From Pecten maximus (lineage: Eukaryota), in contig NC_047029.1 of assembly GCF_902652985.1 (NCBI RefSeq), positions 7,192,001 through 7,256,000 of the forward strand: a stretch of 64,000 nucleotides of DNA, given 5' to 3'. Under the pieces are notes generated by a model. It saw only the letters and a program-made list of their open reading frames with translations, did no database searches and had not been told where the DNA came from. Both the position numbers and the translations under genes were made by a program. Shown one piece after another: positions 14,421 to 42,650 of the stretch (position 1 is its first letter; the number at the start of each line of letters is the position of its first letter).

Positions 14421-15362
14421 GTGACGGGCCTCCCGTGTGTTGGCCATTGAGGTAGTCACTTGTGACGGTCCTCCCGTGTGTTGGCCATTGAGGTAGTCAC
14501 TTGTGACGGGCCTCCCGTGTGTTGGCCATTGAGGTAGTCACTTGTGACGGGCCTCCCGTGTGTTGCTCATTGAGGTAGTCACTTGTGACGGGCCTCCCGT
14601 GTGTTGGCCATTGAGGTAGTCACTTGTGACGGGCCTCCCGTGTGTTGCTCATTGAGGTAGTCACTTGTGATGGGCCTCCAGTGTGTTGCTCATTGAGGTA
14701 GTCACTAGTGACGGGCCTCCCGTGTGTTGGCCATTGAGGTAGTCACTTGTGACGGGCCTCCCGTGTGTTGTTCATTGAGGTAGTCACTTGTGACGGGCCT
14801 CCCGTGTGTTGTTCATTGAGGTAGTCACTTGTGACGGGCCTCCCGTGTGTTGGCCATTGAGGTAGTCACTTGTGACGGTCCTCCCGTGTGTTGCTCATTG
14901 AGGTAGTCACTAGTGACGGGCCTCCCGTGTGTTGCTCATTGAGGTAGTCACTTGTGACGGGCCTCCCGTGTGTTGCTCATTGAGGTAGTCACTTGTGACG
15001 GGCCTCCCGTGTGTTGGCCATTGAGGTAGTCACTTGTGACGGGCCTCCCGTGTGTTGCTCATTGAGGTAGTCACTTGTGACGGACCTCCCGTGTGTTGCT
15101 CATTGAGGTAGTCACTTGTGACGGGCCTCCCGTGTGTTGCTCATTGAGGTAGTCACTTGTGACGGGCCTCCCGTGTGTTGCTCATTGAGGTAGTCACTTG
15201 TGACGGGCCTCCCGTGTGTTGCTCATTGAGGTAGTCACTTGTGACGGGCCTCCCGTGTGTTGCTCATTGAGGTAGTCACTTGTGACGGGCCTCCCGTGTG
15301 TTGCTCATTGAGGTAGTCACTTGTGACGGGCCTCCCGTGTGTTGCTCATTGAGGTAGTCACT
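14421..15362. repeat. 41-bp minisatellite (GTGACGGGCCTCCCGTGTGTTGGCCATTGAGGTAGTCACTT), 23 copies, abutting a CORE-SINE-like motif
   Basis: Tandem periodicity; preceded by TGTGTCCTTGGACAAGACA, which resembles the CORE-SINE central motif. Confidence 0.93.
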
Positions 15363-16285
15363 ATCTACTACAACTGGTAACATTATGAAAACCTTAATGG
15401 ATATACTACAGTTGTAGTTATAGAAACTAATCCAGGTTTGAACTGGTAATTAGTAGACATATTAACTACGTGTCTGCGTTGTTGCATTTAACATCAAAGC
15501 CCCCACGAGATAAAAGATGTCTTGTAATCACGAATCATTTAAATATTTATGCCGTTACATCAACATAAATGCGACATTTCAAACGCCACTAAAGCTATAT
15601 TGGTACCACAGGGACTCACTTCAATACGACTCGCAAACGCTAAAACGAAAATTAAAATTGGATTTTCCGTCTATCTGATAAAATCATTGACTTCGGTGGC
15701 TTTAGATTCTGAAACTTGTATTATAGCAAGATTTTCATGATTGTTCAGACATCGTGTGTCATTCCTGACCAAACAAGTCCTCTGTATATATAATGTACGA
15801 CCTGACATCACAATCTGTTTTAAACATCTGCATGTGACATAATATCGTTAGCCAGTCTCCAGTGACACACATCCTACGGAGAGACGTTTTCGCTGAAGAA
15901 GAAGACCTTACACAGGACGTATTTCAAACCGGTTTGGTCTGGTTTTGTGGTGTTTTATGTCCAATTAAGAAAAAAAAAAGACCGGTGTCCACAAATGATG
16001 AGGCTCATTAACATATTCAGCATCAATTACGTTTATGATGGGCCACTAACGGATGATTTTACATTGAAATACCACTTCTGGACAACCCACCAGACTTAAA
16101 AATTTCCTGAGGAAGGCATTTCAGTATTTAAGGGGAAATCTGAGTGAAGGAACCTCCTTTATATCCTGAAAGTCCAAAAGCTAAGCCCATCACCCAGCAA
16201 TCACTACGGACTTAAAAAACGTCTTACTGAATAATACATACAGTGTAGGTCTTAACGTGAATATTAAACTGTACCATACAATAGA

Positions 16286-16578
16286 TTCGTCCTTCTAGGA
16301 CTTATCAGTGATGCTATAGGGACATTATACAGCTGTGTCGCCCCTCTAGGACTCGTCAGTGATGTTAGGGACATCACACAGCTGTGTCGCCCTTCTAGGA
16401 CTCGTCAGTGATTCTAGGGACATCACATCTGTTTCGCCTTTCTAGGACTCATCAGTGATATCAGGGACATCATACAGCTGTTTCGCCCTTCTAGGACTTG
16501 TCAGCGATGCTAGAGATATCATACAGCTGTTCGTCCTTCTTGGACTCGTCAGTGATGTTAGGGACATCATACAGCTGT
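16286..16578 (-). ncRNA. Tandem array of ~6 minimal hammerhead ribozyme motifs (49-bp unit)
   Basis: Minus-strand consensus ACATCA-CTGACGA-GTCC(TAGAA)GGRC-GAAA-CAGCTG-TA-TGATGT: stem I, CUGANGA, stem II, GAAA, palindromic stem III, GUA cleavage triplet. Confidence 0.8.
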
Positions 16579-16665
16579 GACCCATACATTTTCACGCCCG
16601 GTCGGGGAATCGAACCCCGGCCGCCTAGGTGAAAGGCAAGTGTGTTACCACTATGCCACCCGACC
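16579..16665 (-). mobile_element. tRNA-Glu(TTC)-derived SINE head / Pol III promoter
   Basis: GGTCGGGTGGCATAGTGGTAACACACTTGCCTTTCACCTAGGCGGCCGGGGTTCGATTCCCCGACC: A box TGGCATAGTGG, B box GGTTCGATTCC; anticodon stem poorly paired, so not a functional tRNA. Confidence 0.8.
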
Positions 16666-17909
16666 ATCCTAATAATTGGAAGCAGGACATACTGATTAGA
16701 ATACTATTTTAGTAAATAGCATAAAACAATTGCTTGATAATTATTTTGATAAATTACTGAAGTTTTCTCTACAACTAATGCTGAAAAAAAGTCATATCAC
16801 AGGCTCATGGGACCTTTTAAAATTTTCAAACATACGTCATGGGTTGTTTCTTAGACTGCTACAAATAACACCTAATTATGTCCAAATTGGTGTGTGTGGG
16901 CAAGTTCTATTGTTCCACTAACACATCATTACAGCTTTTCCTGATACAAAGATACGCAAGGCGCAGGTGATGAGGGGTCGTAATAGCTGTTCTACAATGA
17001 GCAAAAGGGTGAACCAAAGAATACCTAATTGAAGTAGAAATAAGAAAAAGATGTGATCCGTTATCGGCCAGCAACAGTGCAAAGTCGTGTCAGTGCGTCT
17101 TTGGTTCCGTGTAGATTAGCATTGTCTTACTCAAACATACAAACAGCACTTTTATTTATTCAGTACTATTGGTTCCCAGATGTATGACTTTAAATTAGAT
17201 TGTCAATATAGATATCACTGTGTAAACTGTAGACATCGCACTGTCACTCTCCTCCCCCGGTAAGTCATCATGGCTGTAGTCTTCATTTTGTCACTGGTGT
17301 ATGTTGCCTTGAGAAAAGTCAAAATAATGATTAACGTAATGATTCACAGGAGGCTAGCTTTCGTATTCCTGAGCGTTTTAAAAGTCTCGTCTCGACTGCT
17401 GTCAACACCGAAAACCGAGTTGGGTAGAGTATCTGTACAAATCCAGTGTTGTAGCAATCCCAATTCTTTATTAGTGTTGAGAGTATACTTCTCATCGGCA
17501 TCATACATATACAATTACATGAAATATAATTCAAGTAGACCATCTGAGTTGGGTAGGATATCTGTAACAAGGTCTCCAGTATTGTAGATTTATGTATCCC
17601 TTTTGTTTATCAAATCATCGTCTCCCCAGTTGCCCACATGAACTTGATCCAAACTCACTTCGTCCTTATACATTCAGAAATGGTACCCGATATTCGCTTT
17701 CCATATACATATATTTACATTTGTTCCGCATTTCCCCATTGACACAATGCTAAGAGGCAGTTGCCACCATACGCCTATAACACCCAGTGCCTCAGGCTAT
17801 AACACCCAGTGGGTTATGTGACATTACAAAAGGCGGGATTTTTTTTTTTTTTTTTTTTGTTGGTTCAGTTTTTTTCAAAGTTGACAGAAATGGCAAGACA
17901 ATGTAAATA

Positions 17910-18090
17910 TAAGTATTGAACAGTGGTTTTAATGTTGTTATAGTCGATATGGCAGCAAGATGTATGGTGGGCAAATGGCATGGGAACCCGTTTAGCATGG
18001 AAACCCTAACGGGTCCCCATGCCATTTGCCCACCATACATCTTGCTGCCATATCGACAATAACAACATTAAAGCAACTGTCCATTGCTTA
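17910..18090. repeat. Long fold-back palindrome (~180 bp)
   Basis: GTCGATATGGCAGCAAGATGTATGGTGGGCAAATGGCATGGG vs CCCATGCCATTTGCCCACCATACATCTTGCTGCCATATCGAC; TAAG...CTTA ends. Confidence 0.88.
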
Positions 18091-18978
18091 AATATATGTA
18101 TCTCCACAAGATCTGGTAAGAAACAAATATCATCTTTCCCAGCTCCACAAGTACACTCAGGATGCTATAGCGTGTCAACATCATCTATAGTAAGGGGCTA
18201 GTCTCCCTTATAGGGGTGTCAGTACTGTACATATCCCCCGGGATCCGTGGGAAGATCTTAACTTACGTTTTCACTACATCGCTTTTAATGGAAAAGTTCT
18301 TCAAAGAAGCCATGATTTGATATAAAGCCATATTATCTACACTATCATCTGTCTATACATAAGAATCGACAATGAACGTGTTCACTCGGGAGTGAATGGG
18401 TAGATAAGGTTTTCAAAATGTTTTGTCTTTTTAAAAAAAATTGTCGACCAGGATGAAAACCCTATACATGGTTCATCATAGTTCGCACGTATCCTGCCCC
18501 CGAGAATTTGTATCTAGCTCAATCGATTTTTACCTTTTACACATTGCTTAATGTAAATGATAGTTGTTTCATTAATTAATTAAAATTCCAGCATGCACAT
18601 GTACTCAAGTGATATTGCATCTTTTGAAATTTTAGATGCCGTTTAAAAAGTGAAATGTGTTGCCGAGATATGATGTACAGCATCTAACAAGGCCTGCTAG
18701 CAGAAAGCATTTACATTTGATAAGCTAAGATGTTTATTATATTTTCCAGTCATTCTCGTTCCAGAACGAAAATTCGGCCCATCGCAACTGAAAGCATTTT
18801 GGCATGAAGGCCCAAAAAAGTTTAGAAGTCAACGAGAAAAGGGATAAGAAAAGGAGAAGAAAGAATTAGACGTCGTCATATTGTAACACCGTGTGCTCCC
18901 CGGATGAATTTAATGGAATGTGGGTTTTGAGGAGCTATCAGGATGTCTGAAAGCAGTCTTGAACACAGCCTTACTTAC

Positions 18979-19379: not shown

Positions 19380-19990
19380 ATTTCCTTTCCTGACATGAAA
19401 GGCGTATTTGACACTTGTTGATATGCCTAATGGTTCTGTTGTCTCTGCCATTTCTCTTGTTTAAAATTGTGACTTAACACGGATTTGACCTAAATTTGTA
19501 AGGATGAAACAGAAGACGCTTACTACCCTGGGGCACGCGGTCTATATTATCTTTGTACCTTTTCATGAGTTTCCATGGAAATATATATTTTCTTTATGAT
19601 TTGTCCACGTTTAATCGTTTTTGTGTTTAAATTACAGCTTTATTATTATGTCGGTATTCTTTGCTGTTTTTGTTGAGTTCAGTAGAAATAACGTTCCAGC
19701 CGTCTACACTTTGGCCCTCTATCGACTGACTTTTCGTCCTGACATGATGTTGGATTCATCAAAGCCCTTATCAAGACAGCTTTAGTGAGTTTTCCCTCGA
19801 TTCTTTCAGATATATCGACGACTTATTGGTTTTAAATGAGAAATTTATTGACAACGCCGATAACATATATTACCTGAGCATGAAATCAATGTCACTACGG
19901 ACTTCATCAGTTGTCTACATATATACTTACTTACAACATATCAGACAGGAAGTGTTTATTTCTTACCTTGATGATACCTTTTATTGAAAT
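19380..19990 (+). mobile_element. Decayed Penelope-like retroelement fragments (3' region and RT YIDD block)
   Basis: FRYIDDLLVLN at ~19805-19837; 19390-19540 homologous to 29575-29700 (GATTTGACCTA...GAAGACGCTTAC). Confidence 0.6.
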
Positions 19991-21193
19991 CGAAATCACT
20001 TCTAACATTACCTATTGGAGCTGGCTTGATACATGACGTGCCGTGATAGACGGCATCTGTTCAAACTTACAATACTTAGATTCGAGAGTTGCGGGTTGAT
20101 GAATTTTGCTGACGGTTTTTACTGCCGTCATCTTGGAATTTAAGGTATATACCATATGCCCTTATATGGTATGATGATATAGGTCAAACTTACATTATTG
20201 CGGCTTTGGGCTTACTAACTAGAAAGACAAATCATGATCTGCATCTGTGGTCGAAGTAAAGCCAAAAGGCTACTCTCCTGAGAAACATTGTTGTTTTTTA
20301 AATCTAATATATCTGAATATGGTTTTCCTCACTTTCCCCATTCTTTGAGAGAAGATATGTCATTTAGTCTTTGGCATTGAACACCATGGTAGTCATTATT
20401 ATTGGGACATTGCGTTTGCGTTCCATTACAAAGTACTTCAAGCTTATAATTGTTTTAAGTCTAGTTTTATGTATTTATGTATTAAAAATGTCTTTAAAAA
20501 TAAAAAAAATATTTTAAAAAAGTCTAGTTTTTTGTCTATATGTAGGGGCTCGCATGTATCCTGTTTTATGACATTGCATGTGCTCAATGAGCTGTGACAC
20601 TCCGACTACCAGTCTGCACGCTAGTGCGCATGTCCTAAGGTTTCATCGGTGTGAATTTCTCACCTGATTGTGATATGGCCATTATAGGCAGTATAAACCA
20701 GGGGCGACACAGATGATCAAAAAATTATCCACAGCCATGGCAAAATAAAGTAATTCAAAAAAAGGAAAAAAATTCTGACGAAGATAGAATGATATTCCTT
20801 GTTGGGAAGTAAGGCGTTTGGTGTGATTACGTGTACAGCGCTGATCGGTGCCCACAGGGGCTTTGTTAGCTGTATCGAGGATAAAAACACTAAAGTGTTC
20901 GTCTCACAATTGAAGTTGTCATGTGGTCCCTAGAAGCTATTTTTCATTAGATGTTTCCGAGAGTCGGTAAAATGTAGCCAGACACAAGAAGACGTCGATA
21001 CAAGTTTTAAAAAATGTATGTTGCAAGGTTTTGTCAGTTATCACTGAAAAGTTTACATAAACAATGCGTGTTCAGATTAACGAGTTCAGAAGTTTAGAAC
21101 TCTGATGTAATGATATTCTCCGGGAAATGTTTGTGGTCAATTTATGCCGAGATATTTAGTAAGCCTACATAATTCGTTTCCTGGTGTTTGAAG

Positions 21194-24100
21194 GTATACC
21201 TATAATGTGATATTGTCTGATGGTAAACCTGTAGTGTGATACACTGTCTGATGGTATACCTGTAGTGTGATACACTGTCTGATGGTATACCTGTAGTGTG
21301 ATACACTGTCTGATGGTATACCTGTAGTGTGATACACTGTCTGATGGTATACCTGTAGTGTGATACACTGTCTGATGGTATACCTGTAGTGTGATACACT
21401 GTCTGATGGTATACCTGTAGTGTGATACACTGTCTGATGGTATACCTTTAGTGTGATAGTGTCTGATGGTATACCTGTAGTGTTATAGTGTCTGATGGTA
21501 TACCTGTAGTGTGATACACTGTCTGATGGTATACCTGTAGTGTGATACACTGTCTGATGGTATACCTGTAGTGTGATACACTGTCTGATGGTATACCTGT
21601 AGTGTGATACACTGTCTGATGGTATACCTGTAGTGTGATACACTGTCTGATGGTATACCTGTAGTGTTATAGTGTCTGATGGTATACCTGTAGTGTGATA
21701 CACTGTCTGATGGTATACCTGTAGTGTGATACACTGTCTGATGGTATACCTGTAGTGTGATACACTGTCTGATGGTATACCTGTAGTGTGATACACTGTC
21801 TGATGGTATACCTGTAGTGTGATACACTGTCTGATGGTATACCTGTAGTGTTATAGTGTCTGATGGTATACCTGTAGTGTGATACACTGTCTGATGGTAT
21901 ACCTGTAGTGTGATACACTGTCTGATGGTATACCTGTAGTGTTATAGTGTCTGATGGTATACCTGTAGTGTGATACACTGTCTGATGGTATACCTGTAGT
22001 GTGATACACTGTCTGATGGTATACCTGTAGTGTGATACACTGGCTGATGGTATACCTGTAGTGTGATACACTGTATGATGGTATACCTGTAGTGTGATAC
22101 AGTGTCTGATGGTATACCTGTAGTGTGATACAGTGTATGATGATATACCTGTAGTGTGATACAGTGTATGATGATATACCTGTAGTGTGATACACTGTCT
22201 GATGGTATACCTGTAGTATGATACACTGTCTGATGGTATACCTGTAGTGTGATAGTGTCTGATGGTATACCTGTAGTGTGATACACTGTCTGATGGTATA
22301 CCTGTAGTGTGATAGTGTCTGATGGTATACCTGTAGTGTGATACACTGTCTGATGGTATACCTGTAGTGTGATACACTGTCTGATGGTATACCTGTAGTG
22401 TGATACACTGTCTGATGGCATACCTGTAGTGTGGTACACTGTCTGATGGTATACCTGTAGTGTGATACACTGTCTGATGGTATACCTGTAGTGTGATAGT
22501 GTGTGATGGTATACCTGTAGTGTGATACACTGTCTGATGGTATACCTGTAGTGTGATAGTGTCTGATGGTATACCTGTAGTGTGATACAGTGTCTGATGG
22601 TATACCTGTAGTGTGATACACTGTCTGATGGTATACCTGTAGTATGATACACTGTCTGATGGTATACCTGTAGTGTGATACACTGGCTGATGGTATACCT
22701 GTAGTATGATACACTGGCTGATGGTATACCTGTAGTGTGATACACTGTCTGATGGTATACCTGTAGTGTGATACACTGGCTGATGGTATACCTGTAGTGT
22801 GATACACTGTCTGATGGTATACCTGTAGTGTGATACACTGTCTGATGGTATACCTGTAGTGTGATACACTGTCTGACGGTATACCTGTAGTGTGATACAC
22901 TGTCTGATGGTATACCTGTAGTGTGATACACTGTCTGATGGTATACCTGTAGTGTGATACACTGGCTGATGGTATACCTGTAGTGTGATACACTGTCTGA
23001 TGGTATACCTGTAGTGTGATACACTGTCTGATGGTATACCTGTAGTGTGATACACTGTCTGATGGTATACCTGTAGTGTGATACACTGTGTGATGGTATA
23101 CCTGTAGTGTTATAGTGTCTGATGGTATACCTGTAGTGTGATACACTGTCTGATGGTATACCTGTAGTGTGATACACTGTCTGATGGTATACCTGTAGTG
23201 TGATACACTGTCTGATGGTATACCTGTAGTGTGATACACTGTCTGATGGTATACCTGTAGTGTGATACACTGTCTGATGGTATACCTGTAGTGTTATAGT
23301 GTCTGATGGTATACCTGTAGTGTGATACACTGTCTGATGGTATACCTGTAGTGTGATACACTGTCTGATGGTATACCTGTAGTGTTATAGTGTCTGATGG
23401 TATACCTGTAGTGTGATACACTGTCTGATGGTATACCTGTAGTGTGATACACTGTCTGATGGTATACCTGTAGTGTGATACACTGGCTGATGGTATACCT
23501 GTAGTGTGATACACTGTCTGATGGTATACCTGTAGTGTGATACAGTGTCTGATGGTATACCTGTAGTGTGATACAGTGTATGATGATATACCTGTAGTGT
23601 GATACAGTGTATGATGATATACCTGTAGTGTGATACACTGTCTGATGGTATACCTGTAGTATGATACACTGTCTGATGGTATACCTGTAGTGTGATACAC
23701 TGTCTGATGGTATACCTGTAGTGTGATAGTGTCTGATGGTATACCTGTAGTGTGATACACTGTCTGATGGTATACCTGTAGTGTGATACACTGTCTGATG
23801 GTATACCTGTAGTGTGATACACTGTCTGATGGTATACCTGTAGTGTGGTACACTGTCTGATGGTATACCTGTAGTGTGATACACTGTCTGATGGTATACC
23901 TGTAGTGTGATAGTGTGTGATGGTATACCTGTAGTGTGATACACTGTCTGATGGTATACCTGTAGTGTGATAGTGTCTGATGGTATACCTGTAGTGTGAT
24001 ACAGTGTCTGATGGTATACCTGTAGTGTGATACACTGTCTGATGGTATACCTGTAGTATGATACACTGTCTGATGGTATACCTGTAGTGTGATACACTGG

Positions 24101-25340
24101 CTGATGGTATACCTGTAGTATGATACACTGGCTGATGGTATACCTGTAGTGTGATACACTGTCTGATGGTATACCTGTAGTGTGATACACTGGCTGATGG
24201 TATACCTGTAGTGTGATACACTGTCTGATGGTATACCTGTAGTGTGATACACTGTCTGATGGTATACCTGTAGTGTGATACACTGTCTGATGGTATACCT
24301 GTAGTGTGATACACTGGCTGATGGTATACCTGTAGTATGATACACTGGCTGATGGTATACCTGTAGTGTGATACACTGTCTGATGGTATACCTGTAGTGT
24401 GATACACTGGCTGATGGTATACCTGTAGTGTGATACACTGTCTGATGGTATACCTGTAGTGTGATACACTGTCTGATGGTATACCTGTAGTGTGATACAC
24501 TGGCTGATGGTATACCTGTAGTGTGATACACTGTCTGATGGTATACCTGTAGTGTGATACACTGTCTGATGGTATACCTGTAGTGTGATACACTGTCTGA
24601 TGGTATACCTGTAGTGTGATACAGTATCTGATGGTATACCTGTAGTGTGATACACTGTCTGATGGTATACCTGTAGTGTGATACACTGGCTGATGGTATA
24701 CCTGTAGTGTGATACACTGTCTGATGGTATACCTGTAGTGTGATAGTGTCTGATGGTATACCTGTAGTGTGATACAGTATCTGATGGTATACCTGTAGTG
24801 TGATACACTGTCTGATGGTATACCTGTAGTGTGATACACTGTCTGATGGTATACCTGTAGTGTGATACACTGTCTGATGGTATACCTGTAGTGTGATACA
24901 CTGTCTGATGGTATACCTGTAGTGTGATACACTGTCTGATGGTATACCTGTAGTGTGATACACTGTCTGATGGTATACCTGTAGTGTGATACACTGGCTG
25001 ATGGTATACCTGTAGTGTGATAGTGTATGATGGTATGACTGTAGTGTGATACACTGTCTGATGGTATACCTGTAGTGTGATACACTGTCTGATGGTATAC
25101 CTGTAGTGTGATACACTGTCTGATGGTATACCTGTAGTGTGATACACTGTCTGATGGTATACCTATAATGTGATACTGTCTGATGGTATACCTGTAGTGT
25201 GATACACTGTCTGATGGTATACCTGTAGTGTGATACACTGTCTGATGGTATACCTGTAGTGTGATACACTGTCTGATGGTATACCTGTAGTGTGATAGTG
25301 TCTGATGGTATACCTGTAGTGTGAAACAGTGTCTGATAGT
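21194..25340. repeat. 31-bp (29-bp variant) minisatellite (TGATGGTATACCTGTAGTGTGATACACTGTC), ~134 copies
   Basis: Tandem periodicity; source of all YHTTGIPSD ORFs. Confidence 0.97.
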
Positions 25341-26596
25341 ATGACTGCTAATATCAAAATTAATATGAAATACTAGAATTGTCCCTCCCATGTTGTAGAG
25401 TACCGGGGCGTGGTTCAGTTCTGTTTTGAGCACATTTGGCAGACAACCGTCTTCAATATGTTCTGGGCGCGGTATTACGTCCCTTTAGTAGCGTTCTTTT
25501 CCGGAGTAATTATACGTTGTAGAACGCCCCCTTTTCTGACGAACTTGTAACTACATAATTTTAATATCATTTTTATAATCCACTATAATGGAAAATTTGA
25601 ACAAATTGATTCTGTGGATTCTATTTGTGCACTATTGTCACATATTGCCGTGGTTCCTGCCGGGGCGTGCACATCCTTGGCGCCTTTGTTAACGTCCGCT
25701 AATATTTGTATTGGTAATAATTTGGGGTTTTGTCGGTTACAACATTGTCCTCGAAAGACGTAATAATACCCATGGTCGGTGATTACCACAGGAAAGGCAA
25801 TGTTAAGGATTCCGCCCGTTTGTTTTCAAAGCCATTCAACTACACCTAGTTCATTCATTGTCAAGAAGTCACAATGCATTTTTTCGCTAACAAAAGACTG
25901 GAATGTTTGTAAAATATAAAAGTATTGCTTGATGTATGATGGCCTAGATCGACTCCATTCGTATGAAAATTATCCTCTCGTTATGTAGACCAACTGTGAT
26001 TCTACGTAAACATTTCGTGTATAAGGAACGGTTCGTCTTATTTCACTACCTTACATACTACATACAAAGGTGTATTATATACTAGGCAGATTCTGCCTCA
26101 TTTGTAATAGATTTTCGTACTGAATTTGAATCTGGCACGACATTTTTTGTAATCATGCCGATGATCGAGTCCCTTTACCGAGAATAAAGAACGATAAATT
26201 GCCGCGGTAGATTTTAATCATAAGAACTGCAACTACAAAATGTAGGCAAGTACAACAGATTGACATACATAACGTCCTAAAACATTAAATAGAGATTAGT
26301 AAATAAACATGTCAATCTCACCAGTCTCACCACTGGGACAAGTATTGTAATAAAATCGTGGTGTCATTGATTATCGCAGTACTACACAACCCCCACCCCA
26401 TCCCCCTGAATAACGGACCTTCATTACTTTTGTAAATGACAGGAAAGGAACAGTTTACGCCAACATTTTAATTCCATCTAATTGATGTTCGTCAAGATTG
26501 CAAATTTAAAATGAAACAATACGTTGTAATTATCCCAAGACGTGACGGGAATACGAAAGCTTCAGTAGAATAGCCACGCCCATCTGAGCCCCGTAC

Positions 26597-28019: not shown

Positions 28020-29720
28020 GATAATACTCCAATCTAGTGACATGTTAACCGACTTGTAAGGATTCCCTATCATCTTGTAAAATCCATATTACCACCGGCG
28101 TCTACAGCCTATTCCTGCTGCAGCATCCACAGTCCAGTTGGACACGTCAAAATTGGCGATCGTTGCATTATTCCTAACGATAAGTTACGAGAGCTTTTCG
28201 AGAAGGGTCCGAATTGAGTATGAATTCCAAGATACTTATGGATTGCATTGAAGAATTGGTAAAAGGAGACCATGCTACAGCAGCTTAAAATCCAAAATGA
28301 ATACAAAACGCAAATTTGAACTTTCTTGATCCAGATGTCAAAACTTGACATGTTTGTAGATAGCACTAGCGGATCCGGGGGGGGGTATGGCGCGAGCATT
28401 ACCACTAAATTACTGGACCCCCCTTTTCAAATTCCTGGATCCGCACCTGATTAATTTGATCTTTGTCTGTAAGCATAACACATCTCCTACTGACAAAAAA
28501 GAACTAGATTTGCTTGACAACCATAACCATCTTACCTATAATGTATACATTGCCTGGGGTATCTTCAGTATTGGAATATTTCAAAATCCCTGATTGTAAG
28601 AAGATGCTGATCTTACTCGTTTATATTGGATTTCTAACTTTATATGAATCCTTATATACAAATTTTTTATTACTGGCTTGTGTTGTTATTCAAATACTCT
28701 TTTATCGTAACATTCCTAGAACATTCAAGTCGAGACTACAGTCCTATTGGAGAACTGTTTTCCCCAAAAGAGGAAGAGATGGAATGTGGATTTTGAACTT
28801 CCATGTGTGCTCCTAAGATATGTTTCATCCCCCAGAAACGGTTTTTTTTCTTCTCTTTACAATACTATTCTCCGTTTCAAAATTCAGGAACGTCTTTGTC
28901 CTCATATAATGAGAACTTTCTTTTCCAAGAAAGGCGAACGGTGATAGCAACATATTTCGTAAAGTTTACGACTAGGGCTTATAGAAAATACATCCAAGAT
29001 GACGTCATGAGCATGGGTGACTTTCTGATCGACAGCATCTCTGTTCAGTGATCAGATCTCCCAACATAATTTTGGCATTCTCTTGGGAGCAAATTATACC
29101 CCTCTATTAGCTGACTTGTTAATTATATTGAAGATTGTGCAAAGTACTTAAATTTCACTTATATGTATATTGACTATGTCTTATCTATAAATAGCAAAAA
29201 CTTGTATTGGCCATCAAACTGAGGACACTACAGACTCTTCAACATCAACCGCTTACCTCGATCTTTACTGACAACGCAATCAGCTGGGAGAGCATACAAC
29301 TACCTGTATGATAGATGTGATAATTTACTGTTAATTTTCCATTTCTAAATAGCAGCATCCCTGCATCCCCTACCTACGTGGTTTACATGTCCCAGTTGAT
29401 TCGATATTCAAGGTTTGCTCTATTATCACGATTTCAGTGACATATATCAACTGCTGACAGAGACATTAACAACACAGTGTTTCGAGAGATGCGGGTTGAT
29501 AAAGACCATGGGAGAAGTTAGTTTTAGTGCCGACATTCTGACCTCATTTAAAGCTTATATGATATGAAGTCTGACGTTTTTGATGTTTGTTGATATGCCT
29601 CGAGGTTTCGTTGTTAGCACCTTAACTCTCATTTGAGATTTTAACCCGGATTTGACCTAGATTTCTATGACATCGCTGAAGCAGAAAACGATTACCCTTT
29701 GTGGAGAACCTTGACATATT
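28020..29720 (+). pseudogene. Decayed Penelope-like element reverse transcriptase plus 3' region
   Basis: Frameshifted motifs in expected order: GHVKIGD..II.NDKLRELFEKGP (~28140-28210), IFVCK, MWIL, GILLGANYTPLLADL (29074), YID(Y)VLSIN (29166), TTDSS..AYLDL, VNFPFLNSSIPASPTYVVYMSQLIRYSR. Confidence 0.82.
28368..28450. mobile_element. Small MITE remnant inserted in the Penelope-like RT
   Basis: GCGGATCCGGG...CCTGGATCCGC inverted ends interrupt the RT motif series. Confidence 0.5.
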
Positions 29721-30149
29721 CTCCTCGTGTTGTTTTCAGGAATCTCAATGAAAAACAATATTGTTGCTATTATTTGCATTATTTTCATTGTTATGTAGGC
29801 ATCCTTTGTTGTTTCATCTCTGTGTCCGAATATGGTCTGACAATTTTCCACTGTGATATTAAGCCATCGATTTCTTGAAGTCGAAGGATAAACGCAATGA
29901 GCGTTGAGCAATATACCAACCGATGACAATAGACAATGCATTATACATTCCAACGACTATTTAGACACCCATACATTCGCCGACTACGATAGCAGTTTTC
30001 ATCGACAGCAGGACTATAGCCGATACTAAGCTGGTCAACCACAATTTAGTCGACATTATGTTCGCCGACCACTACAGCAGATACTATGTTTGCCGACCAC
30101 TAAAGTCGGCAATATCGTCTTCAACCACTATAGCCGACAAATTCCATCG

Positions 30150-32785
30150 ATACAGTCGACACTGTTCACCGATGACAACAGTCGACACTGTTCACTGATG
30201 ACTACAGTCGACACTGTTCACTGATGACTACAGTCGACACTGTTTCACTGATGACTACAGTCGACACTGTTCACTGATGACAACAGTCGACACTGTTTAC
30301 TGATGACTACAGTCGACACTGTTCATTGATGACAACAGTCGACACTGTTCATTGATGACAACAGTCGACACTGTTCCCCAATGTCTACAGTCGACACTGT
30401 TCACTGGTGACTACAGTCGACACTGTTTACTGATGACTACAGTCGACACTGTTTACTGATGACTACAGTCGACACTGTTCACTGGTGACTACAGTCGACA
30501 CTGTTCATTGATGACTACAGTCGACACTGTTCACTGATGACTACAGTCGACACTGTTCACTGATGACAACAGTCGACACTGTTCACCGATGTCTACAGTC
30601 GACACTGTTCACCGATGACTACAGTCGACACTGTTTCACTGATGACTACAGTCGACACTGTTCACCGATGTCTACAGTCGACACTGTTCACCGATGACTA
30701 CAGTCGACACTGTTTACTGATGACTACAGTCGACACTGTTCACTGATGACTACAGTCGACACTGTTCACCGATGACTACAGTCGACACTGTTCACCGATG
30801 ACTACAGTCGACACTGTTCACTGATGACTACAGTCGACACTGTTCACCGATGACTACAGTCGACACTGTTCACTGATGTCTACAGTCGACACTGTTCACT
30901 GATGACTACAGTCGACACTGTTCACTGATGACTACAGTCGACACTGTTCACTGATGACTACAGTCGACACTGTTCACTGATGTCTACAGTCGACACTGTT
31001 CACTGATGACTACAGTCGACACTGTTCACTGATGACTACAGTCGACACTGTTCACTGATGACTACAGTCGACACTGTTCACTGATGACTACAGTCGACAC
31101 TGTTCACTGATGTCTACAGTCGACACTGTTCACCGATGACTACAGTCGACACTGTTCACCGATGACTACAGTCGACACTGTTCACTGATGACTACAGTCG
31201 ACACTGTTCACCGATGACTACAGTCGACACTGTTCACTGATGACTACAGTCGACACTGTTCACCGATGACTACAGTCGACACTGTTCACTGATGACTACA
31301 GTCGACACTGTTCACTGATGACTACAGTCGACACTGTTCACTGATGACTACAGTCGACACTGTTCACTGATGACTACAGTCGACACTGTTCACCGATGAC
31401 TACAGTCGACACTGTTCACTGATGTCTACAGTCGACACTGTTCACTGAATGACAACAGTCGACACTGTTCACCGATGACTACAGTCGACACTGTTCACTG
31501 ATGACTACAGTCGACACTGTTCACTGATGACTACAGTCGACACTGTTCACCGATGACTACAGTCGACACTGTTCACTGATGTCTACAGTCGACACTGTTC
31601 ACTGATGACTACAGTCGACACTGTTCACCGATGACTACAGTCGACACTGTTCACTGATGTCTACAGTCGACACTGTTCACTGATGACTACAGTCGACACT
31701 GTTCACCGATGTCTACAGTCGACACTGTTTACTGATGACTACAGTCGACACTGTTTACTGATGACTACAGTCGACACTGTTCACTGATGACTACAGTCGA
31801 CACTGTTCACTGATGACAACAGTCGACACTGTTCACTGATGACTACAGTCGACACTGTTCACTGATGACAACAGTCGACACTGTTCACTGATGACTACAG
31901 TCGACACTGTTCACCGATGACTACAGTCGACACTGTTCACTGATGACTACAGTCGACACTGTTCACTGATGACTACAGTCGACACTGTTTACTGATGACT
32001 ACAGTCGACACTGTTCACTGATGACAACAGTCGACACTGTTCACTGGTGACAACAGTCGACACTGTTCACTGATGACTACAGTCGACACTGTTCACTGAT
32101 GACTACAGTCGACACTGTTCACTGATGACTACAGTCGACACTGTTCACTGATGACTACAGTCGACACTGTTCACCGATGACTACAGTCGACACTGTTTAC
32201 TGGTGACTACAGTCGACACTGTTCACTGATGACTACAGTCGACACTGTTCACTGATGACAACAGTCGACACTGTTCACCGATGACTACAGTCGACACTGT
32301 TCACTGATGACTACAGTCGACACTGTTCACTGATGACTACAGTCGACACTGTTCACTGATGACTACAGTCGACACTGTTCACCGATGACTACAGTCGACA
32401 TTGTTCACTGATGACAACAGTCGACACTGTTCACCGATGACTACAGTCGACACTGTTCACTGGTGACAACAGTCGACACTGTTCACTGATGACAACAGTC
32501 GACACTGTTCACCGATGACTACAGTCGACACTGTTAACTAATGACTACAGTCGACACTGTTTACTGATGACTACAGTCGACACTGTTCACCGATGACAAC
32601 AGTCGACACTGTTCACCGATGACTACAGTCGACACTGTTCACCGATGACTACAGTCGACACTGTTCACTGATGACTACAGTCGACACTGTTTACTGGTGA
32701 CTACAGTCGACACTGTTCACTGGTGACTACAGTCGACACTGTTCACTGATGACTACAGTCGGCAATGTTCACCGATGACTACAGT
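30150..32785. repeat. 26-bp minisatellite (GACTACAGTCGACACTGTTCACTGAT), ~100 copies
   Basis: Tandem periodicity; one GTCGAC per unit; diverged related units at 29960-30150. Confidence 0.97.
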
Positions 32786-35649: not shown

Positions 35650-36165
35650 AGTCTCCCTAGAAACCAGGGGAACTATACTGGTTTCCTCTCCGTCCGTTTT
35701 GTATAGGTGGCCGCGGTGGCCGAGTGGTTAAGGTGTCCCGACACTTTAACGCTAGCCCTCCACCTCTGGGTTGCGAGTTCGAAACCTACGTGGGGCAGTT
35801 GCCAGGTACTGACTAGGCCGTTGGTTTTTCTCCGGGTACTCCGGCTTTCCTCCACCTCCAAAACCTGGTACGTCCTTAAAGACCCTGGCTGTTAATAGGA
35901 CGTTAAACAAAACAAACCAAACTCCGTCCGTTTTATACGTATGTACGTACGTAACGCTAGAGATTGTCAGCACTCTAACAGCTTTATTCCTGGAGGGATT
36001 TTGTCCAAACTGCACACGATGATAAAAGGGCCACCCTGACCATCGAGACATGATATCTCGGACAAGTTTGAGTTTCAGAGATTTTGGGTCAATGTCATTG
36101 TTAATTTTTCAGCGAGGGACGGTAGAGGACATGTATTGCTTTAATAATGCCCAGTATGTTTGTTT
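35650..36165 (+). mobile_element. Helentron-associated (HINE/DINE-like) non-autonomous element, interrupted by a SINE
   Basis: Terminal TAGTC.CCC...GGGGAACTA inverted repeat, GTCC/GTAC microsatellite, body homologous (inverted) to 42381-42650. Confidence 0.65.
35706..35921 (+). mobile_element. Full-length tRNA-derived SINE with V-like central domain
   Basis: A box TGGCCGAGTGG, B box GTTCGAAAC, TTTCTCCGGGTACTCCGGCTTTCCTCC domain, AAAC tail; TSD CTCCGTCCGTTTT(G)TATA at 35688-35705 and 35922-35937. Confidence 0.9.
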
Positions 36166-37799: not shown

Positions 37800-39003
37800 C
37801 GACGACAGGCGCCATACAAATATAGGTCACTATGACACCCGCAATACACATCTAGGTCATAACGACACCCGCCATACAAATCTAGGTCACGACGACAGGC
37901 GCCATACAAATCTAAGTCAAATCTACGACATCCGCCATACAAATCTAGGTCACGACGACAGGTGCCATACAAATCCAGGTCATGACGACAGGCGCCATAC
38001 AAATCTAGGTCAAGACGACAGGCGACATACAAATCTAGGTCAAATCGACGACACCCGCCATACAAATCTAGGTCACGATGACACCCGCCGTACAAATCTG
38101 GGTCACGATGACACCCGCCGTACAAATCTGGATCACGATGACACCCGCCGTACAAATCTGGGTCACCACGACAGGCGCAATACAAATCTAGGTCACGACG
38201 ACAGGCGCCATACAAATCTAGGTCAAATCTACGACACCCGCCATACAAATATAGGTCACGACGATACCCGCCATGCAAATCTAGGTCACGACGACGCCCG
38301 GCATACAAATCTGGGTCACAATGACACCCGCTGTACAAATCTGGGTCAAATCTACGACACCCGCCATACAAATATAGGTCACGACGATACCCGCCATGCA
38401 AATCTAGGTCACGATGACACCCGCCGTACAAATCTGAGTCACGATGACACCCGCCATACAAATCTAGGTCACGACGACAGGCGCCATACAAATCTAGGTC
38501 ACGACGACAGGCGACATACAAATCTAGGTCAAATCTACGACACCCGCCATACAAATATAGGTCACGACGACACCCGCCATGCAAATCTAGGTCACGACGA
38601 CACCCGCCATACAAATCTAGGTCACGATGACACCCGCCGTACAAATCTGGGTCACGATGACACCCGCCGTACAAATCTGAGTCACGATGACACCCGACAT
38701 ACAAATCTAGGTCACGACGACACCCGCCATACAAATCTAGGTCACGACGACAGGCGCCATACAAATCTAGGTCACGATGACACCCGCCGTACAAATCTGG
38801 GTCACGATGACAACCACCGTACAAATCTGGGTCACGATGACACCCACCGTACAAATCTAGGTCACGATGACACCCGCCGTACAAATATAGGTCAAATCGA
38901 GGACACCCGCAATACAAATCTAGGTCACAACGACACCCGCCATACAAATCTAGGTCACAGCAACACCCGCCATATAAATCTAGGTCAAATCGAGGACACC
39001 CGC
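37800..39003. repeat. 30/33-bp minisatellite (~39 copies) expanded from a Penelope-like 3' segment
   Basis: Minus-strand unit (GATTT)GACCTAGATTTGTATGGCGGGTGTCGTC runs into GTGAAGCGGAAGACGCTTACTCTTCCGAAGCAC, matching 19482-19536 and 29650-29700. Confidence 0.9.
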
Positions 39004-40797
39004 CTATCCATATGCCAATAATGCAATACAAAGCTATGACTATCCAATATCTACTTTGAAAGTGTATTGTTTAGTTCAGACAACAATACCATTGTTTAAA
39101 TAACAAAAGAGTATACCAGGGGATTTAATGGAAAATAAACTAACTCTAACTAATAAACATACGTGAATTCATTTGTCTTGAGCGTGTTTCTAAAGATACG
39201 TGATTTGACTGGTGACGTAATCTACAATCAGGGCAGGGCCATGTCCCAGTTTTTCATTACAGAGTTTAAAAACACAAAAATCAGAAACGAAACAGATAGC
39301 AATTAAGATATCCGATATCCTGAAAGCCGTCCAGTTCAAAATGGTAAAAAATACGAACATTCTTTATTATTTGTGAATTCCTCAATGCGACTGAATTATA
39401 TACCTAGTCGGTATAATGCGTCCGTCGAATGTGACGACGTTTTAAAAATGACGCCGCTTTGTACCCAACGAAAATTGATACTTACAATGACATGTCCTCC
39501 GAGTTGGTAGGTCAATTTTGTTACCGTAGTCTATTTTTTTTTAACTACAATTGTAAAACTATTTCTTTGAATAACTTTACTGCTCAAGGTAGAAAAGAAA
39601 AGCGTATTTCCTGCTAAGCAGGAACTTGACAAGATTCATGTTAAATTGTGAAACTGAATTGTCATTATTTGACACGTATATAGATAGCATGTTTACTTAA
39701 TTATATGTGTGAAGTTCGGGAATGTATTCCGGCATCCAAGTTAGGTACACTTATTGTACTTAACGATGGTGTTAAAAAAAACTATGGTCTACTCTGAGCT
39801 GGGTCGCTTCACTTTAAAAGTTAGTCGTAAGATTACTATCATCAAATATTGGCTTAAGCCATTGAATACTGATAATTGCGTTTTAAAACCGTGTTATAAT
39901 GAACTCGTGAAGCTTAGTATAAGTAAGCCTAACTGTAAAATAAATTGTATGTATCACGTTAAACGAGAGCTTAGTCGTATAGGGTTTTATGACACTTGAT
40001 TACCCAAGCATATATCTCTTTAAAAAATGAAAAATAAATAAATAAATAACTGAAAATATATAAAAAAAAAAAAGCCTTATGCACACAATATCTGCAGGAT
40101 ATTTTATCAAAAACATTTGAAAACTCTCCTAAGTACATTCTATATAAGCACATTGTTGATCGGTTTGAATTGTAGATAAATCAAAAATATCCTTACTAAG
40201 TTTAGGGTACTAGCACATAATATTTTAGTGTTGATAGATAGCAAGGTATCTCCAGAGTCAAGTGGCTGTCTTTATTATTCAATAGAGGATAAGATAAAAT
40301 TGGAACTCATTTTATTTTATTTTTCCCGCTTACTCAGAATTGAGAACATTGTATTACTAAATGATGGTATATATAGTCAGTGTCATTTTCACCGAATTTT
40401 AATCTTAATTGACAAATTCTCAGATCCCTGTGAACAATCTTTTTCAAGATTTTTCTAAAATTTCAGCCATTACACCCACTTAACAATTTCTCGTCGCGTT
40501 TTAACCCTTCCTCACACAAATTACAAAAATGACATCGTCGCTTAAAATGCTGACGCATGAAAATGTCAGGAAACTGAAGAAGGAGAAAAAGTTTTATAAT
40601 AGATCTGTGCAGTGAGAACAGTACGACAGTTTCTATACCTGGGCTGTACTATAAATTATTCATATAGAGTATTTCTCCCGGCTTTTTTCTCTATTGTTAT
40701 CCGATTCTATCTCACGTGTCAGCTTTATGTCATAAGGGCTATCTTAAACTGTTAACGCGCGCGATAAGAAATCTCGAGATTTCTATGATGCACTTAC

Positions 40798-40828: not shown

Positions 40829-42380
40829 CTGACAATGGCGGTAATGAAGGTATGCTTGTTTTGTTTGGTTAGAGACTTAAGTTGTCCTCGTAACCGCTTC
40901 TCGTGCTAGCGCCCTTGTGAATACGACACAGGGGAGATATTTGGTAACCACCCCTGTGTGATTTCGGATGATCGTGAATATTACTTGGTTCGCTCCCGTC
41001 TCTGGCAGAAATAAACTAATTCAACGCATTCGACCCGAAGCCGTTGAGTCGAGGGCATCATCAGCATCAATAATGGCGTCCCTGTAAATTGGAGAAGTTT
41101 ACTCGCTCCCGTTGGCTCCTATCACGTTACGATGTGTGGAAGGGTATACACAAATGTATATGGGAAAAGACAATATGGTATATCAATATAAACATTCGTG
41201 AATACCCTCGTGTACGGAGCCCATTGACTGACATGCCACATGCTTATTTCATTTCATTATATCGTTTTAACGAAATGATAATTCGTTTCAACGTAATATT
41301 TATCGAAATAATAAAATTAGTTTGATCGAAATAATAATTCGTTTTATCGAAATAATAAATCGTTTTATCGAAATGATAATTCGTTTTATCGTAACGTTAT
41401 TCGTTTTTTTTTCGAAATGTTATTTCGTTTTATCGAGTCGAGGGGGAGGGGTACGGGGGATACTAGGGAGTACGGGGGTGGGGGGGGGGGGGGGGGGGGT
41501 GTACCATAATGAATGAATGGATGGATATACACATTTTACAAAATACAATCTAAATCAGGAAAACATTGTCACTAATATATTCCAGAATGCATCTGTCGCC
41601 GTAACCTTCTTTGTAGATTCTGATATCAATTGTATTATTTCAATCGATCAAAGCTAACAACGACAATTTAAAACAATAAATAAAGTTTTATTTCAGGACA
41701 ACGTGGTTACTGTTTCAGCCAGGGGGGGGGGGGGGGGGGGGGGGGGGTCAGTTTAGTGTAAGTCTAGAGCGTAAGTCTAGCCAGCCGGAGTCCCTGCCCT
41801 GGTTCGATCCCTAAAAAGGGCATTTGGAAGGAGGTGAAGAGTATAGACACTGATTAAGGATATCACCTGTAACGTCCCAATAAACAACCCAAAGGTCGCC
41901 AATGACAGTGGAAAGGGAATAATGACAATCCCTTTTAAAGGATTTCGCTTCTTTTTCATTAGAAAATCGACAGTAAAACTCAGCAAAGGGCGCGATAATT
42001 GTACACGTTAAACACATTTCCCCTCCGTTTAAATACATTTGTAGCTCTCATTAGCTAACCGAACGAATCTCTCCAAGATGATGTTAATGAATATCAAAAA
42101 GGGGAGTCAATGGCAAGTTGTAGTTCAAGACTGCTTGGTATTGTTTGTTCAAGTTATATTACATCAGATAGGGGGGGGGGGGGGGGGGTCGGTAAAAAAA
42201 AAAAGACAATCGGTGTTCAGTGAAATACTACAAATGTCAATAACATATAGACCATATAACAATTTTTCCAGTGTTCTGACCTTCGACGACAGCAATATAT
42301 CATCGAGGCTATAGGAAATCTTATTTTGGACATGTGTATTGGATTATTTTCCCTTAAAATGTGAACATCAAGAGCGAATA

Positions 42381-42650
42381 ACAAGCAAAATATGTATCAC
42401 TAAAACAATACATGACCCCTACCGGTCCGCACTAAAAATAGTAACAATTAATGACCTTGACCTTGACCCAAAATCCCTGAAACGCGAACTTGTCCGAGAT
42501 ATTATGGTCCTTCATCATTGTGTGGAGTTTAATCAAAATCCCTTGAGGAATGAGGCCTCTAGAGTGCTGGCAAACTTTGGTGTTACGTATGTACGTACGT
42601 AACGGAGAGGAAACCTTTAGTTCCCCCCGGTTTCGCCGGTAAGGGACTAA
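42381..42650 (-). mobile_element. Helentron-associated (HINE-like) element, second copy
   Basis: Inverted homology to 35650-36165; GACCTTGACC motif, GTAC microsatellite, TAGTTCCCCCCGG...CCGG.AAGGGACTA end. Confidence 0.65.

What the first reader, a model, noticed from the sequence alone, without database searches (positions are those of the whole stretch)
16214..16665. tRNA-derived Pol III promoter fused to a tandem hammerhead-ribozyme array (retrozyme/Sm-alpha-like unit)
Seen: on the minus strand an intact A box and B box (tRNA-Glu-like head, 16665-16590) read straight into ~6 copies of a 49-nt unit. The unit consensus is ACATCA CUGACGA GUCC-UAGAA-GGRC GAAA CAGCUG UA UGAUGU, i.e. stem I, CUGANGA, stem II, GAAA, self-complementary stem III ACAGCUGU and a GUA site. 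The first run of 4 or more T on that strand is at 16219-16214, predicting a ~450-nt Pol III transcript. Known: minimal type I hammerheads with palindromic stem III occur in Penelope-like element LTRs and animal non-LTR retrozymes, and schistosome Sm-alpha repeats combine a Pol III promoter with a hammerhead. Inference: a chimeric SINE-head/ribozyme unit that could yield multimeric RNA cut into ~49-nt monomers, far shorter than typical retrozyme monomers, possibly mobilised by Penelope RT (remnants lie 3 kb and 12 kb away). A one-off fusion of a truncated SINE with an array is also possible.
Basis: partly seen in the sequence, partly recalled or inferred. Interest (0 to 1): 0.85.

Follow-up and report, generated by a model that had tools for sequence, protein, structure and literature searches.

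The report
Decayed hammerhead array behind tRNA-like promoter
A stub of a tRNA gene that still carries an RNA polymerase III promoter runs into six tandem 49-base copies of a self-cutting hammerhead RNA typical of animal jumping genes, but five copies are mutated at essential bases and no second example was found, so it is most likely a dead one-off relic.

Summary
On the minus strand, 16665-16595 is a tRNA-Glu(UUC)-like sequence with A and B boxes that match the Pol III consensus exactly. Seventeen bases later, six 49-nt units (16577-16287) begin. The first run of four or more T is at 16219-16214.

The unit consensus is a complete minimal hammerhead. Its core, helix II and palindromic helix III match hammerheads found in Penelope-like elements and retrozyme-like repeats from metagenomes. 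It folds as a compact type III-like hammerhead in which neighbouring units share helix III.

The locus is decayed. No Rfam hit reaches the gathering score (36.2 and 31.4 bits against 48.5). Five of six units carry a lesion at an essential core position. Core positions have diverged as fast as loops.

I found no second copy of the head, the junction or the 49-nt unit, either in the window or in the collections I could reach. There is no target-site duplication.

Best reading: a relic hammerhead minisatellite fused to a tRNA-derived promoter in a region that is 30% minisatellite. A dispersed Pol III-driven ribozyme SINE family is not excluded, but it could not be tested without the source genome.

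The parts
16595..16665 (-). tRNA-Glu(UUC)-derived head (SINE-type Pol III promoter module; not a credible functional tRNA)
   Evidence: ARAGORN tRNA-Glu, anticodon at position 32. Rfam tRNA 24.4 bits against gathering score 29, with mismatches in the acceptor, D and anticodon stems. The MFE fold is no better than shuffles, z = -0.76.
16648..16658 (-). A box, exact match to TRGCNNAGTGG
16606..16616 (-). B box, exact match to GGTTCGANNCC
   Evidence: one of only two matches in the window
16578..16594 (-). 17-nt linker between the tRNA-like 3' end and the first unit
   Evidence: Read. No significant similarity to the unit or to the 3' flank.
16530..16577 (-). Unit 1: helices intact, but one A of GAAA/A15.1 is deleted
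16481..16529 (-). Unit 2: core G8 changed to A (CUGACAA); helix I weakened
16432..16480 (-). Unit 3: the only unit with all 12 constrained core positions intact. One mismatch each in helix II and helix III. Predicted cut between 16473 and 16472.
16385..16431 (-). Unit 4: 2-nt deletion at the palindrome/cleavage site and GACA in place of GAAA
16336..16384 (-). Unit 5: cleavage triplet GUG (G at position 17) and GACA in place of GAAA
16275..16335 (-). Unit 6 (G8 changed to A, 2-nt insertion in loop 1, no 3' helix III partner), followed by a partial seventh unit fading out
16220..16274 (-). Unique 3' trailer
   Evidence: No other copy in the window
16214..16219 (-). T6 run, the first possible Pol III terminator after the head

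Best explanation
The stretch 16665 to 16214 on the minus strand is a composite relic. A tRNA-Glu-derived, SINE-type head with perfect A and B boxes is joined, 17 nt downstream and in the same orientation, to a minisatellite. The 49-nt unit of that minisatellite is one complete minimal hammerhead ribozyme of the metazoan Penelope-like-element/retrozyme class and nothing else. It has a 6-bp helix I, CUGAYGA, a 4-bp helix II with a 5-nt loop, GAAA, the palindrome ACAGCUGU and a GUA site. Only a 5-nt cap (CCCUA) sits where retrozymes carry 120-350 nt of cargo. In tandem, the palindromes of neighbouring units pair, so each unit can fold as a compact type III-like hammerhead. An intact ancestor transcribed through the array would have cut itself into 49-nt RNAs with 5'-OH and 2',3'-cyclic phosphate ends, and these can dimerise through the palindrome. 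Shown: the anatomy, the homology of the core to PLE/retrozyme hammerheads, the fold of the consensus, and the decay. Five of six units carry lesions at essential core positions, and the core diverges as fast as the loops. At most unit 3 could still cut, after 16473. Inferred: the array arose from the hammerhead end of a PLE or retrozyme copy and was amplified at the DNA level in a region that is 30% minisatellite. The fusion to the head is a local one-off. Pol III could still read from the head to the T6 run (452 nt), but the product would be essentially uncut.
For: Anatomy. Hammerhead identity: Rfam Hammerhead_3 at 36.2 and 31.4 bits, E 3.9e-6 and 8.5e-5. The consensus unit plus 6 nt has the three-way hammerhead junction as its MFE fold, -17.3 kcal/mol. 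91.7% of helix cells are paired, against 23-61% when partners are slid. Class: a 26-specified-base pattern of core, helix II and helix III found 24 metagenome loci. All are type I hammerheads. L002 and L014 lie next to RT or GIY-YIG ORFs. L013 and L017 are 565-569-nt tandem repeats. All six helix I pairs covary across these loci and the window units, with 37 double changes and 0 of 500 shuffles reaching that. Decay: divergence is 11.1% in the core, 9.9% in stems and 9.1% in loops, and 5 of 6 units have core lesions. Lesions are shared between units (U4/U5 GACA; U2/U6 G8A), so the array went on being copied as DNA after inactivation. One-off: head, trailer and unit are unique in the window. There is no target-site duplication. 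The 49-nt form and the head gave no hits in the collections. Context: 21 arrays cover 30% of the window. Literature: PLE ends can seed locally amplified retrozyme arrays. Metazoan type I hammerheads have 6-bp helix I, 4-bp helix II and a short palindromic helix III, and act as dimers.
Against: A head ending within 20 nt of an array edge and pointing into it is unlikely by chance: about 0.7% per head and about 2% for the three tRNA-like elements in the window (my estimate). This hints at a real link between head and array. The source genome could not be searched, so 'one-off' rests on absence of evidence in collections that may not hold this organism. The metagenome pattern required an intact core, which even the window's own units fail, so decayed sister copies would have been missed. 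No PLE or retrozyme parent with this helix I sequence was found.
Confidence: 0.55

Rival explanations
1. One reading: this is one (old) copy of a dispersed SINE-like family. A tRNA-derived Pol III head drives a multimeric hammerhead transcript that is cut into 49-nt monomers. The element would be propagated by a Penelope-like reverse transcriptase, as tRNA-SINEs borrow the 3' end of their partner LINE.
For: The A and B boxes are perfect, although the rest of the cloverleaf has decayed. There is no T>=4 for 452 nt. The head sits 17 nt from the array in the right orientation, about 2% by chance (estimate). The hammerhead is of the PLE/retrozyme class. There is precedent in Sm-alpha, a promoter followed by a hammerhead and apparently transcribed by Pol III, and in the proposal that retrozymes are non-autonomous partners of PLEs.
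Against: No second copy was found anywhere I could look. There is no target-site duplication and no recognisable tail. The core is not under purifying selection at this locus. Cleaved monomers would lack the promoter. No significant PLE coding remnant exists in the window.
Confidence: 0.25
2. The array is part of a degraded Penelope-like element (tandem minimal hammerheads of a pseudo-LTR), and the tRNA-like head is an unrelated neighbour or a later insertion.
For: PLEs carrying minimal hammerhead copies in tandem are reported. The core matches hammerheads that sit next to PLE ORFs in L002 and L014. A faint GIY-YIG-like ORF lies at 29794-29940(-): pairwise E 6e-4, but 0.35-0.37 window-wide.
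Against: No RT or endonuclease signal was found within 13 kb by Pfam, tblastn or phmmer. No other hammerhead is found in the window at Rfam E<=1 or with the custom model; the hit at 29393-29453 lacks the core. The PLE hammerheads recovered have an open helix I spanning the element, not a 5-nt cap.
Confidence: 0.1
3. The head is a working tRNA or tRNA-like gene. The array either lies in its 3' trailer by chance or landed there through integration targeted at Pol III genes. RNase P and RNase Z would separate the two RNAs, as in tRNA-linked dicistronic Pol III units.
For: ARAGORN calls a tRNA. The promoter boxes are perfect. There is a weak match to the mascRNA/menRNA tRNA-like model, 19.1 bits, E 0.34.
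Against: Rfam tRNA scores 24.4 bits, below the gathering score of 29, with non-standard pairs in three stems. The fold is no better than shuffles. There is no terminator directly after the tRNA-like part.
Confidence: 0.07
4. The hammerhead resemblance is a chance property of one of the many minisatellites in this region.
For: 21 arrays in 64 kb give many trials. No Rfam gathering-level hit. No compensatory changes within the array.
Against: Whole-window E-values of 4e-4 and 9e-3 already account for both strands and 4227 families. All three helices and both core strands are in register. The 31-nt core/helix II/helix III segment differs by one base from a pattern shared by 24 independent hammerhead loci.
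Confidence: 0.03

Closest known systems
Minimal or canonical metazoan type I hammerheads of Penelope-like elements (Cervera and de la Pena 2014, PMC4209133; Lunse et al. 2017, as cited in PMC6765202)
   Same: 6-bp helix I, 4-bp helix II, and a very short palindromic helix III expected to work through pairing between two copies. The same core/helix II/helix III sequence occurs next to RT and GIY-YIG ORFs.
   Different: Here helix I is closed by a 5-nt loop and the motif is repeated head to tail every 49 nt. No PLE coding sequence is nearby, and most copies are mutated.
Animal non-LTR retrozymes (Cervera and de la Pena 2020, PMC7229834; Li et al. 2026 preprint, 10.64898/2026.07.22.740005)
   Same: Tandem repeats that each carry one type I hammerhead. 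They have no coding capacity and a proposed origin from PLE ends followed by local amplification. L013 and L017 (565-569-nt repeats) are examples with the same core.
   Different: Reported monomers are about 150-450 bp and give structured circRNAs of about 170-400 nt. This unit is 49 nt with no cargo. Array GC is 48%. No expression data are available. That paper names no native promoter for retrozymes.
Sm-alpha / Sj-alpha SINE-like elements of schistosomes (Ferbeyre et al. 1998; Laha et al. 2000; as summarised in PMC6765202 and PMC8490949)
   Same: [quoted passage not shown]
   Different: In Sm-alpha the whole unit of about 335 bp, promoter plus one hammerhead, is what repeats and disperses. 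Here a single head precedes six promoter-less hammerheads, and no dispersal is shown.
tRNA-derived SINEs and SINE-derived satellites
   Same: A tRNA-like head with internal A and B boxes. Tandem arrays growing out of or beside SINEs are documented (titles). In this window another tRNA-SINE copy (14112-14245) also lies just upstream of an array.
   Different: No SINE body, tail or target-site duplication, and the head is unrelated to the window's other SINE family.

Membership tests
Hammerhead ribozyme | Conserved core CUGANGA ... GAAA with A15.1-U16.1 and a cleavable NUH triplet | tested here: inconclusive
   Met by the majority consensus and by unit 3 only. Units 1, 2, 4, 5 and 6 each break at least one position.
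Hammerhead ribozyme | Three helices around the core in the right register | tested here: met
   91.7% of cells paired, against 23-61% when slid. The MFE fold of the consensus is the three-way junction.
Hammerhead ribozyme | Rfam covariance-model score at or above the gathering threshold | tested here: not met
   Hammerhead_3 scores 36.2 and 31.4 bits against 48.5. Hammerhead_1 scores 13.8 against 34.
Hammerhead ribozyme | Self-cleavage | not testable with these tools
   Needs in vitro transcription of unit 3 and of the consensus dimer.
Animal non-LTR retrozyme | Tandem repeats that each hold a type I hammerhead | tested here: met
   Six units; both the type I and the type III registers are readable.
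Animal non-LTR retrozyme | Monomer of roughly 150-450 bp giving a structured circRNA | tested here: not met
   The unit is 49 nt.
Animal non-LTR retrozyme | Many genomic copies; expressed circular RNA | not testable with these tools
   The source genome and transcriptome are not available. There are no copies elsewhere in the window.
Sm-alpha-like Pol III hammerhead SINE | Internal Pol III promoter upstream of the hammerhead | tested here: met
   The A and B boxes match exactly and lie 31 nt apart. No T>=4 occurs before 16219.
Sm-alpha-like Pol III hammerhead SINE | Promoter plus ribozyme repeated as one unit and dispersed in the genome | tested here: not met
   A single head precedes the array. 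Dispersal beyond the window is not testable.
tRNA-derived SINE | tRNA-related head with A and B boxes | tested here: met
tRNA-derived SINE | Target-site duplications and a 3' tail (A-rich or simple repeat) | tested here: not met
   The longest shared flank word is 6 nt. Flank similarity is no better than shuffles, 248 of 2000.
tRNA-derived SINE | Multiple copies | tested here: inconclusive
   Unique in the window. No hits in viral contigs for the head or at protein level. The source genome was not searchable.
Functional tRNA gene | Cloverleaf scoring above the Rfam tRNA gathering threshold | tested here: not met
   24.4 bits against 29, with non-standard pairs in the acceptor, D and anticodon stems.
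Penelope-like element | RT plus GIY-YIG endonuclease ORF flanked by hammerhead-bearing pseudo-LTRs | tested here: not met
   No RT or GIY-YIG hit in ORFs of 40 aa or more between 12 and 30 kb. tblastn and phmmer with PLE ORFs from L002, L014 and L023 give best E of 0.35-0.37.

The most novel reading that the evidence does not exclude
This locus is a fossil of an undescribed kind of SINE: a tRNA-derived Pol III head joined to a 3' module copied from the hammerhead end of a Penelope-like element. Its transcript would process itself into 49-nt cargo-free hammerhead RNAs, the smallest retrozyme-type unit by a factor of three or more. Such a family would give animal ribozyme repeats a defined promoter and a defined retrotransposition partner.
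Probability: 0.15. Interest if true: 0.75.

Novelty: new variant of a known kind. Interest (0 to 1): 0.42.

Why it matters
Animal hammerhead repeats (retrozymes) are abundant and highly expressed, yet the retrozyme paper read here names no native promoter, and their dependence on Penelope-like elements is still a proposal. A tRNA-type Pol III head fused directly to a hammerhead array would, if it proved to be a family, make both questions testable. It would also show that a retrozyme can shrink to the bare ribozyme. At present the locus documents only two things: such a fusion can form, and a hammerhead can persist as an ordinary decaying minisatellite.

Tried and rejected
1. Rfam at gathering thresholds over the whole window returned nothing. 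The hammerhead call rests on sub-threshold hits.
2. I looked for other copies and found none. The 49-nt-specific pattern gave 0 hits in genome contigs and viral contigs. The generic pattern and the head pattern gave 0 hits in viral contigs.
3. The single metagenome scan found 24 hammerhead loci, but none is a 49-nt array and none has the head.
4. I translated the 58-aa ORF that spans the head plus 1.7 units (16494-16667, minus strand) to find spurious gene calls on sister copies. The word-based search found no homologue. The full HMMER search gave one spurious hit to a repetitive 2446-aa protein.
5. Attempts to identify the organism failed. Two protein searches on interspersed-repeat ORFs and one exact look-up found nothing. 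The source stays unknown. My impression of a mollusc is from memory only and is not used as evidence.
6. Nothing was significant. Pfam RVT_1 is weak even on the intact PLE ORF of L002 (E 0.007), so this negative is soft.
7. The RYIDD-containing ORF at 19748-19984 shows no real similarity to a PLE RT.
8. A custom covariance model of the unit (R1) found one extra window hit at 29393-29453(-), 17.5 bits. It is an 8-bp inverted repeat without the catalytic core and was rejected.
9. The target-site duplication idea (TGTATGG at both array edges) was rejected: it is no better than shuffles, and the right edge is simply a partial seventh unit.
10. No clear higher-order repeat structure exists among the units, only some shared lesions.

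Full report
**What is there**

All coordinates below are on the minus strand.

- **tRNA-like head, 16665-16595.** ARAGORN calls it tRNA-Glu(UUC). The Rfam tRNA model gives 24.4 bits, under the gathering score of 29, with non-standard pairs in the acceptor, D and anticodon stems. The fold is no better than shuffled sequence. It is therefore tRNA-derived, not a credible working tRNA.
- **Promoter boxes.** The two internal Pol III promoter elements are perfect. The A box at 16648-16658 and the B box at 16606-16616 match their consensus without mismatch, and they lie 31 nt apart.
- **Array.** After a 17-nt linker, six units with a 49-nt period occupy 16577-16287 (TRF: 6.0 copies, 83% matches). A partial seventh unit fades out by about 16275.
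- **Terminator.** The first run of four or more T after the head is T6 at 16219-16214. A Pol III unit of 452 nt is geometrically possible.

**The unit is a hammerhead**

- The majority consensus of the six units reads, in order:
  - palindrome CAGCUG
  - U and A (the GUA cleavage triplet)
  - helix I UGAUGU, with a 5-nt cap, pairing to ACAUCA
  - CUGACGA
  - helix II GUCC, with a 5-nt loop, pairing to GGGC
  - GAAA
  - then the palindrome of the next unit
- Rfam finds nothing at gathering thresholds in the whole window. With E-value thresholds it reports Hammerhead_3 at 36.2 and 31.4 bits (gathering score 48.5). The E-values are 3.9e-6 and 8.5e-5 for the local search, and 4e-4 and 9e-3 for the whole window against all 4227 families. 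The better hit is spliced across two units.
- The consensus unit plus the next six bases has the three-way hammerhead junction as its minimum-free-energy fold, -17.3 kcal/mol.
- Across the six real units, 91.7% of helix cells are standard pairs, against 23-61% when partners are slid by one to three columns.
- In a tandem array the motif can be read in two ways:
  - As type I: helix I open, with the palindrome ACAGCUGU as a very short helix III.
  - As type III: helix I capped, with helix III formed by the palindromes of neighbouring units.
- The type III reading is the stable one for a single RNA. Cleaved consensus monomers are predicted to dimerise through the palindrome.

**Which class of hammerhead**

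- I scanned the metagenome collection with a pattern of 26 specified bases covering the core, helix II and helix III. It returned 24 loci.
- All are type I hammerheads with an open helix I.
- L002 and L014 carry them beside ORFs with reverse-transcriptase or GIY-YIG endonuclease signatures, the Penelope-like arrangement.
- L013 and L017 carry them once per 565-569-nt tandem repeat, the retrozyme arrangement.
- I aligned 21 distinct loci with five window units. All six helix I pairs change on both sides (37 cells; none of 500 shuffles reaches this), while helices II and III stay constant.
- The window's unit therefore shares its catalytic centre with a real, covarying hammerhead class, and it has its own complementary helix I.
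- This matches the published description of metazoan type I hammerheads: 6-bp helix I, 4-bp helix II, and a short palindromic helix III that acts through dimers.

**The locus is decayed**

I checked twelve constrained positions in each unit:

| Unit | State of the core |
|---|---|
| 1 | One A of GAAA/A15.1 deleted |
| 2 | G8 changed to A |
| 3 | All positions intact; one mismatch each in helices II and III |
| 4 | GACA in place of GAAA; 2-nt deletion at the palindrome/cleavage site |
| 5 | GACA in place of GAAA; uncleavable GUG triplet |
| 6 | G8 changed to A; no 3' helix III partner |

- Divergence from the consensus is 11.1% at core positions, 9.9% in stems and 9.1% in loops. There is no sign of selection on catalysis.
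- Lesions are shared between units: GACA in units 4 and 5, and G8-to-A in units 2 and 6. The array therefore went on being copied as DNA after those units were already dead.
- In the fold of the real 452-nt RNA, only unit 1 keeps the hammerhead shape.
- At most one cut, after 16473 in unit 3, can be expected today.

**Is it a family?**

- Within the window, the head, the linker, the trailer and the unit are all unique. A covariance model built from the six units finds no further credible copy. Its one extra hit, at 29393-29453, is an inverted repeat without the core.
- There is no target-site duplication. The longest shared flank word is 6 nt, and the similarity between the two array edges is matched by 248 of 2000 shuffles.
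- Outside the window:
  - The closed-helix-I form gave no hit in the genome or viral collections.
  - The head gave no hit in viral contigs.
  - None of the 24 metagenome loci has a 49-nt array or the head.
  - A 58-aa ORF running through the head and 1.7 units has no relative in either protein collection.
- These negatives are soft. The source organism could not be identified. The collections may not contain it. The metagenome pattern demanded an intact core, which the window's own units do not have.

**Surroundings**

- 21 tandem arrays cover 30% of the window. Minisatellite growth is the local norm.
- Another tRNA-derived SINE family is present twice: full length at 35709-35915 and internally deleted at 14112-14245. 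Its head is unrelated. The deleted copy also lies about 175 nt upstream of an array, in the same orientation.
- By my estimate from these densities, a head ending within 20 nt of an array edge and pointing into it has a chance of about 0.7% per head. Head and array are therefore probably linked by more than coincidence. The link could be mechanical (arrays seeded at or near SINEs) rather than functional.
The only trace is a GIY-YIG-like 49-aa ORF at 29794-29940. Its pairwise E-value is 6e-4, but it is 0.35-0.37 once the whole window is the search space.

**Interpretation**

- Best reading (0.55): a relic. The hammerhead end of a PLE or retrozyme copy became a 49-nt minisatellite next to a tRNA-derived promoter and then decayed neutrally. 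The published model that PLE termini seed locally amplified retrozyme arrays fits this.
The perfect promoter boxes and the tight, co-oriented junction are what it predicts. Sm-alpha shows that a Pol III promoter plus a hammerhead can form a SINE-like element.
- Remaining rivals: a fragment of a PLE pseudo-LTR (0.10), a working tRNA-like gene with the array in its trailer (0.07), and chance resemblance (0.03).

**Novelty**

- In the searchable literature, only two papers hold 'hammerhead', 'retrozyme' and 'RNA polymerase III' together. Neither describes a tRNA-headed hammerhead array.
- Reported retrozyme monomers are about 150-450 bp.
- A cargo-free 49-nt unit behind a tRNA-type head is thus a new variant of known kinds. 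Here it is seen only as one degraded copy.

Noticed in passing
window 1-64000 (arrays listed; e.g. 767-3651, 10808-12268, 14419-15362, 21185-25342, 30151-32785, 37800-39004, 44372-45336, 51768-53354): 21 unrelated minisatellite arrays with periods of 21-59 nt cover 30% of the window. Several create long spurious ORFs in more than one frame.
   Followed up: partly
window 35709-35915 (+) and 14112-14245 (+): Two copies of a different tRNA-derived SINE: A-box-like start, a body, and an AAAC-rich tail. The second copy has an internal deletion and lies about 175 nt upstream of the 41-nt array 14419-15362. It faces the hammerhead unit across about 2.5 kb. Rfam does not score its head as tRNA.
   Followed up: partly
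window 4744-4918 and 17904-18096: Two long, near-perfect palindromes (86% and 85% self-complementary, about 180-190 nt). They hit microRNA precursor models on both strands below gathering score (MIR6274, let-7). They look like MITE-type hairpins rather than miRNA genes.
   Followed up: no
window 29794-29940 (-) and 29393-29453 (-): A 49-aa ORF with faint, non-significant similarity to the GIY-YIG region of a Penelope-like ORF (L014). About 340 nt downstream is a weak hit of the custom hammerhead model that lacks the catalytic core.
   Followed up: partly
window 35936-36164 and 42380-42601: An inverted pair of a 70%-identical interspersed repeat whose translations are conserved (…DPKSLK…LVRDIM…QNP.RN…). 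It has no Pfam hit and no homologue in the protein collection.
   Followed up: partly
window 41480-41499, 41722-41747, 42171-42188 (G runs); 62075-62087, 63394-63412 (C runs); 41801-41811 (+): Long homopolymer G/C tracts. The only other exact B-box match in the window lies about 55 nt after the 26-nt G run.
   Followed up: no
window 8473-8764: A 59-nt tandem repeat whose units each contain an exact A-box consensus match (three matches). No B box is nearby.
   Followed up: no
window 13411-13556: A 146-base run of N (assembly gap or masked), flanked on both sides by (TTGTA)n microsatellite. Left as is.
   Followed up: no
L017:1-1839, L013:1-1132, L006: Metagenome contigs made of 565-569-nt tandem repeats, each with one type I hammerhead with a GUA site (retrozyme-like). 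L002 and L014 carry the same hammerhead core beside Penelope-type RT/GIY-YIG ORFs. L016 and L004 also show inverted partial hammerhead copies.
   Followed up: partly
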